Positions 2,952-4,704 of a DNA stretch of 36,235 nucleotides are shown one piece after another. The first letter of the stretch is position 1, and every line of letters starts with the position of its first letter. A model generated the notes under the pieces. That model saw only the letters and a program-made list of their open reading frames with translations, searched no databases and was not told the origin of the DNA. The position numbers were made by a program, and so were the translations under genes. The DNA lies in assembly GCF_001194135.2 (NCBI RefSeq), contig NC_068990.1, forward strand, positions 742,253 to 778,487. Reading direction: 5' to 3'. This DNA comes from Octopus bimaculoides (Eukaryota).

Positions 2952-3179
2952 TTTTGCACGAGCTTATTCTTGGCGATGTACGGGGGACAACGAAGGCGAC
3001 GCGTACGAACAAAAGTTGCTATTAAATATACGCACATCTGGAAGTCGAGTCGAGACCTAGTTGCATATCTGAGAATTAGGTTTATTGAAAGTGTATCAAT
3101 TATTTACAGTAGATGACGCCCATATAGGGGATTGCTATAAGGTTGTTATCCACCCCTGATTGGAACTCTCCCGTATGGC

Positions 3180-3479
3180 ATGTACGCATGCTCAGTGACT
3201 TGCTTTAACTACCGCAGACACAAATACTGCTGTATATGCAGCCACTATAGAGGGAAGAATGTAGACGGCAAAGTTATTTCACTCTATAAATATCCTGCAA
3301 ACGTAGCTATTTGTCGTATTTGGCTTCAGAGATCGAGACTTGTGCGGAAAGACTTTGTTTACGCTGCAAATAGCCAAATGTGTTCCCAGCATTCCGTCAA
3401 TTTTAATGGACCATCGAAAGATCACCCCTTGCCATCCGTTTTTCCAAACAAAGTATTTAAAATATCAGTAAGTGCATGA
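3180..3479 (+). CDS. THAP zinc-finger domain (transposase N-terminus, probably exon 1)
   Basis: CCIC...ISLYKYP...RIW...R..F...MCSQH...PLPSVFP matches the THAP C2CH/P/W/AVPTIF-like pattern; the conserved HF is HS here. A GTAAGT donor at 3468-3473 precedes the stop. Confidence 0.8.
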   Translation: MYACSVTCFNYRRHKYCCICSHYRGKNVDGKVISLYKYPANVAICRIWLQRSRLVRKDFVYAANSQMCSQHSVNFNGPSKDHPLPSVFPNKVFKISVSA

Positions 3480-4215
3480 TCATATACGCAGTTAGTAGAT
3501 GAGTNNNNNNNNNNNNNNNNNNNNNNNNNNNNNNNNNNNNNNNNNNNNNNNNNNNNNNNNNNNNNNNNNNNNNNNNNNNNNNNNNNNNNNNNNNNNNNNN
3601 NNNNNNNNNNNNNNNNNNNNNNNNNNNNNNNNNNNNNNNNNNNNNNNNNNNNNNNNNNNNNNNNNNNNNNNNNNNNNNNNNNNNNNNNNNNNNNNNNNNN
3701 NNNNNNNNNNNNNNNNNNNNNNNNNNNNNNNNNNNNNNNNNNNNNNNNNNNNNNNNNNNNNNNNNNNNNNNNNNNNNNNNNNNNNNNNNNNNNNNNNNNN
3801 NNNNNNNNNNNNNNNNNNNNNNNNNNNNNNNNNNNNNNNNNNNNNNNNNNNNNNNNNNNNNNNNNNNNNNNNNNNNNNNNNNNNNNNNNNNNNNNNNNNN
3901 NNNNNNNNNNNNNNNNNNNNNNNNNNNNNNNNNNNNNNNNNNNNNNNNNNNNNNNNNNNNNNNNNNNNNNNNNNNNNNNNNNNNNNNNNNNNNNNNNNNN
4001 NNNNNNNNNNNNNNNNNNNNNNNNNNNNNNNNNNNNNNNNNNNNNNNNNNNNNNNNNNNNNNNNNNNNNNNNNNNNNNNNNNNNNNNNNNNNNNNNNNNN
4101 NNNNNNNNNNNNNNNNNNNNNNNNNNNNNNNNNNNNNNNNTGGTTGCTGAAAGCAGATTGGGATCAGGCAATACTTCTGCTTATTCCTGTCTGAAGTATC
4201 AGACGTATCGTCCGA

Positions 4216-4386
4216 TTAATTTACTTTGTTGACATTCTTCATCGACAGAATTTTTATACCTTCCAACCTTTCAGTCAAGTCCGCCTTTCTTCCAGTAACA
4301 TACTGTCCATATAATCTTAAATATTTCTTTAACTCAGGCACAGTAAGTATTTCGATAGCTGAATCATCGAATTGCTTTATATCCAT
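4216..4386 (-). CDS. SAP-domain ORF (56 aa; N-terminus of the element's second protein)
   Basis: Hand translation: MDIKQFDDSAIEILTVPELKKYLRLYGQYVTGRKADLTERLEGIKILSMKNVNKVN*. LTVPELK..LR..G..VTG.KADL.ERL fits the SAP consensus. It is below the ORF-track length cutoff, and VLPDPNLL follows in another frame. Confidence 0.8.
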   Translation of the reverse strand: MDIKQFDDSAIEILTVPELKKYLRLYGQYVTGRKADLTERLEGIKILSMKNVNKVN

Positions 4387-4704
4387 GATAAGACGTAAAA
4401 CAATAACAATAGCGTAGATAGTCTGCGGAAGTTTAATTGTCTACCTGGAGCGCCGCCTAGCCAAGGGAGATAACCTACTTATAGGAAAGCCCTATAACTC
4501 TGCTTATTTCGTTCTGTATAATTAATTTGCCGATCATTTGGTCACGGATTGTTTGGCTTTATTGACACGGAAGATTCCAGTGTTGTCACGATACAATTGA
4601 AGAAAGTATAACCGTAAGTGTACGGAGTTGTTCATTATGCAACTAATTCATGCAATCGGAAGGACGCGAAGATTAACACAGGCAGCTATCAATAAAACAA
4701 ACGA

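What the first reader, a model, noticed from the sequence alone, without database searches (positions are those of the whole stretch)
3126..4493. Compact TIR element carrying only two convergent DNA-binding modules (THAP and SAP): candidate ISL2EU-type mini-element
Seen: 25-bp imperfect TIRs (19/25), an AT duplication on both flanks, a THAP ORF starting 54 nt inside the left end and a SAP ORF starting 107 nt inside the right end, pointing at each other across an N gap of about 640 nt. Established: ISL2EU (PHIS group) elements have AT TSDs, RR..YY termini, a THAP-DDE transposase and a second YqaJ-like exonuclease ORF. Inference: the SAP ORF is the N-terminus of that second protein. Unless the gap is far larger than shown, both catalytic cores are deleted. 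The result could be a non-autonomous family, a source of dominant-negative or DNA-binding mini-proteins, or a source of convergent dsRNA/piRNA. The TATA context also permits a TA-TSD reading.
Basis: partly seen in the sequence, partly recalled or inferred. Interest (0 to 1): 0.75.

Follow-up and report, generated by a model that had tools for sequence, protein, structure and literature searches.

The report
Decayed ISL2EU transposon copy in octopus
This is an ordinary, broken copy of a known kind of cut-and-paste transposon (ISL2EU) in the Octopus bimaculoides genome. Its two small DNA-binding reading frames are the first exons of the element's two normal genes, and the middle of the copy is hidden by an assembly gap.

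Summary

The ISL2EU assignment holds.
- Three related species carry the predicted empty site GACGCCCA-TATA-ACTCTGC. The insertion is therefore a real transposition that duplicated AT/TATA.
- Proteins related to the SAP ORF are 550-600 aa SAP-(SWIM)-YqaJ nucleases.
- One of these lies in an intact 4.57-kb element in the mussel Sinanodonta woodiana. That element has near-identical TIRs, TATA flanks and a convergent THAP-HTH-DDE_Tnp_4 transposase. Each end of the octopus copy matches the corresponding end of the mussel element.

The "two-module mini-element" reading is not established.
- The 636-N gap could not be closed, so a full 3.8-kb interior cannot be excluded.
- The copy is decayed. The canonical transposase start codon is deleted. 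The THAP "stop" is intron read-through. The SAP ORF ends at a premature stop.
- The alleles specific to this copy's THAP side are absent from RNA reads.

The family has hundreds of ends, tens of THAP exons and many short derivatives.

Verdict: a defective member of a known superfamily, already described in molluscs. Interest is low.

The parts
3123..3126 (.). Left flanking TATA. It is the target-site duplication, read either as AT 3124-3125 next to an A...T terminus or as a 4-bp TATA next to a G...C terminus.
   Evidence: One search gives the sequence. In one search, empty-site contigs of 3 species join 3122 to 4493 with 4 shared letters. In one search, depth from other copies starts at 3123.
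3126..3150 (+). Left (THAP-side) terminal inverted repeat. A3131 and G3134 are private mutations of this copy; the family has G and C there.
   Evidence: At 3131 A>G and 3134 G>C, nearly all reads carry the other letter. The TIR is homologous to the mussel TIR TATAGGGCATTCCAATAAG.
3151..3179 (+). THAP-side subterminal sequence (..CCACCCCTGATTGGAACTCT..). It is specific to this end and conserved in the mussel element.
   Evidence: 40/48 identity to the THAP-side end of L001. The motif TTGGAACTCT is also seen in L002.
3204..3219 (.). Subterminal motif TTTAACTACCGCAGAC, the inverted partner of 4421-4436. In relatives it reads AACTTCCGC (ETS-like core). It is a putative promoter or binding site (inference).
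   Evidence: I3 (88% complementary). The motif is conserved in L001 and L002 (I20).
3180..3467 (+). Exon 1 of the transposase gene, encoding the THAP zinc finger. Only 3221 onward is canonical coding sequence. The ATG at 3180 is a fortuitous in-frame start in former 5' leader, created by a deletion of about 43 nt that removed the canonical ATG.
   Evidence: Loose ends before 3221 read ATGATGTCTCCGAAGAAATCACG, and P0003 has the matching N-terminus.
3468..3504 (+). Start of transposase intron 1 (GTAAGT donor at 3468). The ORF's stop at 3477-3479 lies in this intron.
   Evidence: In one search, 13 RNA reads of X24 leave at 3467 for AATATACAACTGAATGGATG... (the next exon). The mussel gene has the same donor position.
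3505..4140 (.). Assembly gap of 636 N (estimated length). It hides either a short deleted interior or about 3.8 kb of interior, which would be the DDE core plus the SWIM-YqaJ exons.
   Evidence: Not closable here.
4141..4215 (-). Decayed continuation of ORF2 exon 1 beyond the premature stop (SDDTSDTSDRNKQK, then a frameshift or deletion relative to P0004).
   Evidence: P0004 aligns over 4386-4174. RNA and DNA reads show 9-12 nt indel variants at 4196-4198.
4216..4386 (-). SAP-domain ORF, the N-terminus of the element's second gene (SAP-SWIM-YqaJ nuclease). It is cut short by a TAA where other copies read Ser.
4421..4436 (.). Subterminal motif GTCTGCGGAAGTTTAA, the inverted partner of 3204-3219, upstream of the SAP ORF.
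   Evidence: I3.
4449..4468 (-). SAP-side subterminal sequence (AGCGCCGCCTAGCCAAGGGA). It is specific to this end and conserved in the mussel element.
   Evidence: The 38/48 identity to the SAP-side end of L001 spans 4449-4496, so it includes the right TIR.
4469..4493 (-). Right (SAP-side) terminal inverted repeat.
4493..4496 (.). Right flanking TATA, the target-site duplication.
   Evidence: empty site. In one search, reads of other copies diverge after 4496 (408 reads) far more often than after 4495 (48) or 4497 (45).

Best explanation
The feature is one defective copy of an ISL2EU-group (PHIS superfamily) cut-and-paste DNA transposon family of Octopus bimaculoides.

The autonomous form of this lineage is about 4.6 kb. 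It carries two convergent, intron-containing genes that each start about 100 nt inside an end:
- a THAP-HTH-DDE_Tnp_4 transposase;
- a SAP-(SWIM)-YqaJ-type nuclease.

Transposase made by other copies would bind the about 25-40-bp TIRs and the end-specific subterminal sequence. It would excise the element and insert it at TATA, duplicating the central AT or the whole TATA (inference from the family).

This copy inserted after O. bimaculoides split from three related species, and it then decayed. The two 'DNA-binding modules' are simply the first exons of the two genes. The transposase exon has lost its canonical start codon, its 'stop' is intron read-through, and the SAP exon has a premature stop followed by a frameshift.

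The interior is hidden by an assembly gap. I put the chance that it is internally deleted (a non-autonomous derivative of about 1.4 kb) at about 0.65, and the chance that it is full length but unassembled at about 0.3. In either case it encodes no working protein. At most it could be moved in trans.
For: Organism: the closest proteins are all O. bimaculoides UniRef entries at 76-97% identity.

Real transposition: contigs of three other species join 3122 to 4493 with the 4 letters TATA shared. Their flanks are about 4-5% diverged.

Target: other copies share sequence exactly from 3123 to 4496. A4496 is kept in about 90% of reads.

Multi-copy family:
- Single-copy depth is about 1 in the raw reads.
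- The ends stand at about 260-480x.
- The SAP exon stands at about 100-260x.
- The THAP exon stands at about 35-75x.

The two ends belong to one family:
- Deletion derivatives join 3209->4174, 3218->4266 and 3177->4340.
- Each end matches the corresponding end of the mussel element: 40/48 on the THAP side and 38/48 on the SAP side.

Gene content of the family:
- A search with P0007 (SAP plus the next segment) finds 93 relatives. The long ones are SAP + YqaJ (+SWIM), with YqaJ E-values of 1e-8 to 1e-19.
- P0016 lies in L001:7898-12467, between identical TIRs TATAGGGCATTCCAATAAG. It converges on a 507-aa THAP/HTH_Tnp_4/DDE_Tnp_4 gene, with DDE_Tnp_4 at E=1e-43.
- L002 shows the same SAP-YqaJ -> <- THAP-DDE layout.
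- This content matches the published definition and the mollusc examples (Crassostrea gigas) in Han 2015.

Decay of this copy:
- A stop where P0004 reads on, then a frameshift.
- A deletion of about 43 nt that removes the canonical ATG.
- Private TIR mutations at 3131 and 3134.
- About 2.5% divergence from the family consensus.

Splicing: RNA reads leave at 3467, the GTAAGT donor, for a further exon. The mussel gene has the same donor position.
Against: - The DDE core and the YqaJ domain were never seen in octopus sequence itself. They are inferred from a mussel relative with 71% THAP identity and from a splice into an unseen exon 2.
- The transposase was not placed in a phylogeny with reference ISL2EU sequences.
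- The flanks are T-AT-A rather than the published A-AT-T. The termini therefore read either A...T with an AT TSD or GG...CC with a 4-bp TATA TSD. One of the two textbook features is not met literally.
- The gap length is only the scaffolder's estimate, so 'internally deleted' is a judgement and not a result.
Confidence: 0.85

Rival explanations
1. The copy is full length (about 4.5 kb). The interior, comprising the DDE core and the SWIM-YqaJ exons, collapsed in a short-read assembly and the gap size is underestimated. It would be an ordinary, though mutated, autonomous-type element.
For: - The gap lies inside a repeat with tens to hundreds of copies, and both contig ends stop inside it.
- Family contigs run at least 241 nt into the gap without reaching the other side.
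- Spliced exon1-exon2 RNA shows that longer copies exist in this genome.
- An intact relative is 4.57 kb.
Against: - The scaffolder estimated 636 nt. All 14 gaps in the window are 710 nt or less, which suggests sizing by read pairs.
- The copy shares its start-codon deletion with the P0001 cluster, so it looks like a derivative sublineage.
- THAP exons are about 5-10 times rarer than ends, so most family members are deletion derivatives.
Confidence: 0.3
2. The element is a functional mini-element, selected or exapted to express THAP and SAP mini-proteins (dominant-negative regulators) or convergent dsRNA/piRNA precursors.
For: - The family is transcribed, with reads laid in both mate orientations over both halves.
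- The P0001 cluster shows several copies with the same 99-aa THAP ORF.
Against: - The alleles of this copy at 3178, 3345, 3363 and 3394 are absent from essentially all RNA reads (0-1 reads each). At 4350 and 4445 only a handful of reads carry the window's letter.
- The THAP ORF ends only because translation runs into the intron. The SAP ORF ends at a mutation that sister copies lack.
- The canonical start codon is deleted.
- Convergent genes are the ancestral layout.
- The RNA library's strandedness is unknown.
Confidence: 0.04
3. The THAP half and the SAP half belong to two unrelated repeats, brought together by chance or by mis-scaffolding across the gap.
For: The two halves sit on different contigs joined only by N, and their copy numbers differ several-fold.
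Against: - The empty site in three species removes exactly 3123-4492 as one unit.
- Deletion derivatives join the two ends directly.
- Both ends, each with its own subterminal sequence, flank one intact element in the mussel.
Confidence: 0.01
4. The element belongs to another THAP-bearing DNA transposon superfamily (Kolobok or P) or to PIF/Harbinger proper.
For: THAP domains also occur in Kolobok and P transposases (my own knowledge). DDE_Tnp_4 is shared with PIF/Harbinger.
Against: - The TSD is AT/TATA. It is not TTAA, 8 bp or TWA (Han 2015).
- The partner gene is a YqaJ nuclease, not Myb/SANT. Within PHIS this is the ISL2EU hallmark.
Confidence: 0.03

Closest known systems
ISL2EU group of the PHIS (PIF/Harbinger-ISL2EU-Spy) superfamily, e.g. 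ISL2EU-2_CGig (= Repbase ISL2EU-10_CGi) of Crassostrea gigas and ISL2EU-1_CSav (Han et al. 2015, PMC4482050, Table S2)
   Same: - The transposase has THAP, HTH_Tnp_4 and DDE_Tnp_4 domains and is 440-550 aa.
- The second ORF is a 500-650 aa YqaJ protein.
- The autonomous length is 4-5 kb.
- The termini are G-rich.
- An AT is duplicated at a palindromic AT-rich target.
- The group occurs in molluscs and has non-autonomous families without ORFs.
   Different: - The target here is T|AT|A (TATA) rather than A|AT|T, so there is an extra A/T between the AT and the GGG terminus.
- The SAP and SWIM-like N-terminal parts of ORF2 are not mentioned in the papers read.
- The DDE phylogeny was not tested.
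Intact element in Sinanodonta woodiana (L001:7898-12467, GCA_046254885.1 CM100992.1)
   Same: - The TIRs are homologous (TATAGGGCATTCCAATAAG versus TATAGGGGATTGCTATAAG / TATAGGGCTTTCCTATAAG).
- Both have TATA flanks.
- The end-specific subterminal sequences are about 80% identical.
- The THAP exon is 71% identical, with the same GTAAGT donor.
- The SAP ORF starts about 100 nt inside the other end.
   Different: The mussel copy is intact: 565-aa and 507-aa gene models and identical TIR cores. The octopus copy is mutated and its interior is unknown. The hosts belong to different mollusc classes.
MITE-like or internally deleted non-autonomous derivatives of DNA transposons
   Same: The copy shares TIRs, subterminal sequence and TSD with an autonomous type. 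The family is dominated by short derivatives, with breakpoints at 3177, 3209 and 3218 joined to 4174-4340.
   Different: Whether this particular copy is short is unknown because of the gap. It still keeps both first exons, unlike the roughly 400-bp derivatives.
PIF/Harbinger
   Same: It has a DDE_Tnp_4 transposase plus a second, separately encoded DNA-binding protein, and an AT-rich palindromic target.
   Different: Harbinger has a 3-bp TWA TSD and a Myb/SANT partner. Here the TSD is AT/TATA and the partner is a SAP-YqaJ nuclease.

Membership tests
ISL2EU (PHIS superfamily) | Transposase with a PIF/IS5-type DDE domain (Pfam DDE_Tnp_4) and HTH | tested here: inconclusive
   The domain is not visible in this copy, where it would lie in the gap 3505-4140. 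It is met in the homologous intact element L001 (DDE_Tnp_4 E=1e-43, HTH_Tnp_4 E=2e-14) and in L002. In octopus the only trace is a splice from 3467 into an unseen exon 2.
ISL2EU (PHIS superfamily) | N-terminal THAP zinc finger on the transposase | tested here: met
   For window 3180-3479, Pfam THAP scores 21.6 bits at E=3.9e-4, just under the cut-off. The sister copy P0002 scores 27.1 bits. The ORF is 71% identical to the L001 THAP exon, which scores 34.8 bits.
ISL2EU (PHIS superfamily) | Second ORF encoding a YqaJ-type exonuclease protein | tested here: inconclusive
   This copy keeps only the SAP N-terminus. Octopus sister copies extend into the SWIM-like segment. Full-length relatives found with that query carry YqaJ at E=1e-8 to 1e-19. 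No octopus YqaJ sequence was seen.
ISL2EU (PHIS superfamily) | 2-bp AT target-site duplication at target A|AT|T | tested here: inconclusive
   The empty site in 3 species has one TATA where the filled site has two. This is compatible with an AT TSD plus A...T termini, or with a 4-bp TATA TSD. The flanking bases are T and A, not A and T, and A4496 is kept in about 90% of copies. TA-TSD readings are excluded.
ISL2EU (PHIS superfamily) | TIRs of 6-259 bp that usually start with GG | tested here: met
   The TIR is about 25-28 bp and begins (A)GGGG / (A)GGGC. The same holds in L001.
ISL2EU (PHIS superfamily) | Transposase falls in the ISL2EU clade of a DDE phylogeny | not tested
   No reference ISL2EU, Harbinger or Spy sequences were available in the tools, and no octopus DDE sequence was recovered.
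Non-autonomous (internally deleted) derivative | Lacks the catalytic coding regions while keeping the TIRs and TSD of the autonomous partner | not testable with these tools
   This depends on the real length of the gap 3505-4140. No long reads are served. Raw-read sampling gives about 1x per run at a single-copy site, too thin for copy-specific walking.
Kolobok / P element (other THAP transposons) | TTAA TSD (Kolobok) or 7-8 bp TSD (P); single transposase gene (from my own knowledge) | tested here: not met
   The duplication is AT/TATA. The partner gene is a YqaJ nuclease and the DDE is DDE_Tnp_4.
PIF/Harbinger | 3-bp TWA TSD and a Myb/SANT second ORF (Han 2015) | tested here: not met
   The duplicated unit is 2 or 4 bp. 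The second ORF is SAP-YqaJ.

The most novel reading that the evidence does not exclude
The copy could belong to an amplified sublineage, shared with the P0001 cluster, of about 1.4-kb elements that retain just the two DNA-binding first exons. Its THAP and/or SAP mini-proteins, or convergent transcripts, would then regulate the parent ISL2EU family.

Separately, the octopus and unionid-mussel elements have about 80% identical non-coding ends. This could reflect horizontal transfer between mollusc classes.
Probability: 0.05. Interest if true: 0.5.

Novelty: new member of a known kind. Interest (0 to 1): 0.18.

Why it matters
It matters little beyond annotation.

- It documents an ISL2EU family in a cephalopod with a TATA target, a clean orthologous empty site and an intact relative in a freshwater mussel.
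- It shows that the ISL2EU second protein has a SAP-(SWIM)-YqaJ layout.
- It is a caution for the scan. An apparent two-module mini-element can be produced by an assembly gap that hides the interior of an ordinary two-gene transposon. Short ORFs near TE ends are often just first exons.

If the mini-protein or horizontal-transfer readings were true, they would be of moderate interest to transposon biologists.

Tried and rejected
- **Closing the gap.** No PacBio or Nanopore runs are listed. Logan contigs break inside the repeat and show only 30 letters of overhang. Raw-read sampling is about 1x per run, too thin for copy-specific walking. I did not walk with invented sequence, because read laying accepts only window or locus letters.
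- **Fetching other octopus copies.** Exact-protein look-ups failed for P0001, P0007, P0014, P0015 and for the window's own two ORFs. These proteins are UniRef-only.
- **Searching the window.** No second copy of either end or of the TIR pattern is present. No interior fragments are present either.
- **Word-based protein searches.** The THAP exon, the SAP exon and the SWIM-like segment returned only short octopus models. No full-length octopus transposase or YqaJ protein was found.
- **TA-TSD reading.** Rejected by the 19-nt empty site.
- **'CSVTC' as the first zinc ligands of the THAP finger.** Rejected. The conserved C2 is in KYCCIC, and 3180-3220 is former 5' leader.
- **L002 and L003.** L002 has the convergent gene pair, but I could not define its TIRs. 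L003 has only the YqaJ gene on a short contig.
- **Pfam on two LINE-looking ORFs of the window.** No hits.
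Full report
**What is in the sequence**

The window is a draft scaffold with 14 N-gaps. The closest proteins to both small ORFs are Octopus bimaculoides UniRef entries at 76-97% identity. I therefore take the host to be O. bimaculoides.

- Arms 3126-3150 and 4469-4493 match at 19/25. 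They are the best inverted repeat in the region.
- A degenerate TIR pattern hits only these two places in 36 kb, with 0 expected.
- The flanks carry AT at 3124-3125 and 4494-4495. The repeat is in fact TATA on both sides, at 3123-3126 and 4493-4496.
- ORF 3180-3479 (+) is a THAP finger. Pfam gives 21.6 bits, just under the cut-off. A sister copy passes.
- ORF 4386-4216 (-) has a SAP domain at 25.7 bits, above the cut-off.
- Between them lie 636 N.

**The gap**

The scan's program asked that the gap be tested first. I could not close it.
- No PacBio or Nanopore run is served.
- Short-read contigs break inside the repeat. Family-level contigs continue at least 241 nt beyond 3504 (GAAATGTCTCTTTGATTTATC...) without reaching 4141.
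- Raw reads are sampled at only about 1x per run at a single-copy site.
- The octopus proteins are not in the contig index.

Continuity and length across 3505-4140 therefore remain unknown. Anything that depends on 'compact' is unproven.

**The insertion is a real transposition event**

Contigs from three other species (coded organisms B, C and D) cover the orthologous locus. Their flanks are about 4-5% diverged. They join 3122 directly to 4493, with the four letters TATA fitting either side.

This has three consequences.
- The THAP and SAP halves behave as one mobile unit.
- The insertion is dated to after the split from those species.
- The TA-TSD readings, which need a 17- or 21-nt empty site, are excluded.

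It cannot separate 'AT TSD with A...T termini' from 'TATA TSD with GGGG...CCC termini'.

Other copies share sequence exactly from 3123 to 4496. Among raw reads, 408 diverge after 4496, 48 after 4495 and 45 after 4497. On the left, depth begins at 3123. The family therefore targets TATA.

**The family**

Single-copy depth is about 1 in the raw-read samples. Against that:
- the element's ends stand at about 260-480x;
- the SAP exon stands at about 100-260x;
- the THAP exon stands at about 35-75x.

Many members are short deletion derivatives. An abundant form leaves the reference at 3209 (94-190 reads). Individual contigs join 3209->4174, 3218->4266 and 3177->4340. These joints show again that the two ends travel together.

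The family is transcribed. Thirteen RNA reads leave at 3467, where GTAAGT follows, for a further exon beginning AATATACAACTGAATGGATG.... The THAP ORF is therefore exon 1 of a spliced gene. Its stop codon at 3477 is intron read-through.

**What the two ORFs belong to**

Octopus gene models extend the SAP exon into a segment ending ...VTGNVHSADCNC. A full HMMER search with such a model (P0007) found 93 relatives. The long ones (550-600 aa) are SAP + YqaJ-like nuclease, and one also has a SWIM hit. P0014 aligns collinearly with P0016.

P0016 is encoded in locus L001 from assembly GCA_046254885.1. A paper's accession table appears to list this as Sinanodonta woodiana, a unionid mussel. The SAP-YqaJ gene (8001-10110, +) converges on a 507-aa gene (12346-10353, -) with three domains:
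- THAP at 34.8 bits;
- HTH_Tnp_4 at E=2e-14;
- DDE_Tnp_4 at E=1e-43.

The pair is bounded by TIRs TATAGGGCATTCCAATAAG at 7898 and 12467, 4570 bp apart, with TATA on both sides.

The octopus copy matches this element in several ways.
- Its left end matches the THAP-side end at 40/48 and its right end matches the SAP-side end at 38/48. Beyond the shared TIR, each side has its own conserved subterminal sequence.
- The THAP exons are 71% identical in protein and in DNA, and end at the same GTAAGT donor.
- The mussel exon 2 (..FQLNADMEQGD..) resembles the octopus spliced continuation (NIQLNGCPED).

A second locus, L002, shows the same SAP-YqaJ -> <- THAP-DDE arrangement.

**Comparison with the literature**

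Han et al. 2015 (PMC4482050) define ISL2EU by these features:
- an AT TSD at target A|AT|T;
- TIRs of 6-259 bp that usually start with GG;
- one ORF with DDE, HTH and THAP;
- a second ORF with YqaJ;
- a mean autonomous length of about 4.84 kb.

They list mollusc families in Crassostrea gigas (4.8-5.1 kb; DDE_Tnp_4, THAP; YqaJ 545 aa). They also list ORF-less families such as a 1287-bp one in Capitella. Two further papers give the same definition.

The lineage found here fits, with one deviation. The target is T|AT|A rather than A|AT|T, so an extra A/T sits between the AT and the GGG terminus.

A DDE phylogeny against reference sequences was not possible. No octopus DDE or YqaJ sequence was seen directly. 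I therefore file the copy as an ISL2EU member at about 0.85-0.9 confidence, resting on homology to an intact relative.

**State of this copy**

It is decayed.
- Relative to the mussel element and to canonical octopus copies, it lacks about 43 nt that include the canonical start. Loose ends before 3221 read ATGATGTCTCCGAAGAAATCACG, and P0003 begins MMSPKKSRKYCC. The ATG at 3180 is a fortuitous in-frame start in former leader sequence.
- The P0001 cluster (3 members) shares this N-terminus, so the deletion marks a small sublineage.
- The SAP ORF ends at a TAA where P0004 reads Ser and continues. A frameshift or deletion follows.
- The left TIR has two private changes, at 3131 and 3134.
- The copy differs from the family majority at about 2.5% of sites.
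- RNA reads essentially never carry its own alleles at 3178, 3345, 3363 or 3394. Only a handful carry the window's letter at 4350 and 4445. The RNA signal therefore comes from other copies.

**Mechanism**

The following steps are shown:
- one-unit insertion with an AT/TATA duplication at TATA;
- a multi-copy family with deletion derivatives;
- splicing of the transposase exon;
- homology to an intact two-gene element.

The following steps are inferred from established knowledge of PHIS elements:
- a DDE_Tnp_4 transposase, guided by its THAP finger and probably helped by the SAP-SWIM-YqaJ protein, binds the TIRs and the subterminal sites;
- it excises the element and integrates it at a staggered cut in TATA;
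- this copy supplies no protein and could at most be mobilised in trans.

Whether its interior is deleted (my estimate is about 0.65) or merely unassembled (about 0.3) is open. The estimate rests on the read-pair-sized gap, the derivative sublineage and the predominance of derivatives.

**Verdict**

The feature is an ordinary defective copy of a known superfamily. The 'only two DNA-binding modules' picture comes from the assembly gap combined with first-exon ORFs. The mini-protein and dsRNA ideas have no support. Novelty: new member of a known kind. Interest: low.

Noticed in passing
L001:7898-12467 (GCA_046254885.1, apparently Sinanodonta woodiana) versus window 3123-3504 and 4141-4496: An apparently intact ISL2EU element in a freshwater mussel shares its TIRs (17/19), about 80% identical non-coding subterminal sequence and a 71% identical THAP exon with the octopus family. 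The hosts are a bivalve and a cephalopod. This could reflect horizontal transfer or very strong constraint on the ends.
   Followed up: partly
window 3204-3219 and 4421-4436; L001 about 7960-7975 and about 12375-12390; L002 7977-7990 and 13339-13352: An inverted pair of AACTTCCGC-type motifs (ETS-like CGGAAGT core) sits a few tens of nt upstream of each of the two convergent ORFs. It is conserved in octopus and in two other mollusc elements. It may be a shared promoter element or a protein-binding site.
   Followed up: no
window 3175, 4468, 4477, 4481 and 4494 (read overhangs): In tens of genomic reads the element sequence is replaced at these points by the palindrome GGTTCGTCCATCGATCGATGGACGAACC. 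This suggests another repeat that is recurrently joined to or inserted in this family.
   Followed up: no
window 3144-3209: The first roughly 85 nt inside the left end are about 5-10 times more abundant than the THAP exon. Most reads leave at 3209 for AGTTGCAATCAGCTGAATGCACATTGCCAG. This is a high-copy short derivative (MITE-like) subfamily with a different interior, and it is also abundant in RNA.
   Followed up: partly
window 4196-4198: There is indel polymorphism among copies in the Ser/Asp-rich linker after the SAP domain: 9 nt left out, or the 12 nt TCGTCCGATACT put in. This amounts to a small tandem-repeat expansion and contraction (SDDTSDTSD).
   Followed up: no
window 1022-1453 (+) and 11863-12327 (-): These ORFs look by eye like C-terminal tails of non-LTR retrotransposon ORF2 proteins, but they gave no Pfam hit. 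The window is also rich in (AC)n, (AAT)n and (GAGA)n microsatellites at very high read depth (for example 2922-2995 and 4698-4845).
   Followed up: partly
L002:4434-6650 (-) and 10936-13286 (-): Two transposase-homologous regions lie in one 18-kb locus of assembly GCA_022045235.1. The second converges on the annotated SAP-YqaJ gene but is itself unannotated and interrupted. I could not define the element's ends there.
   Followed up: partly
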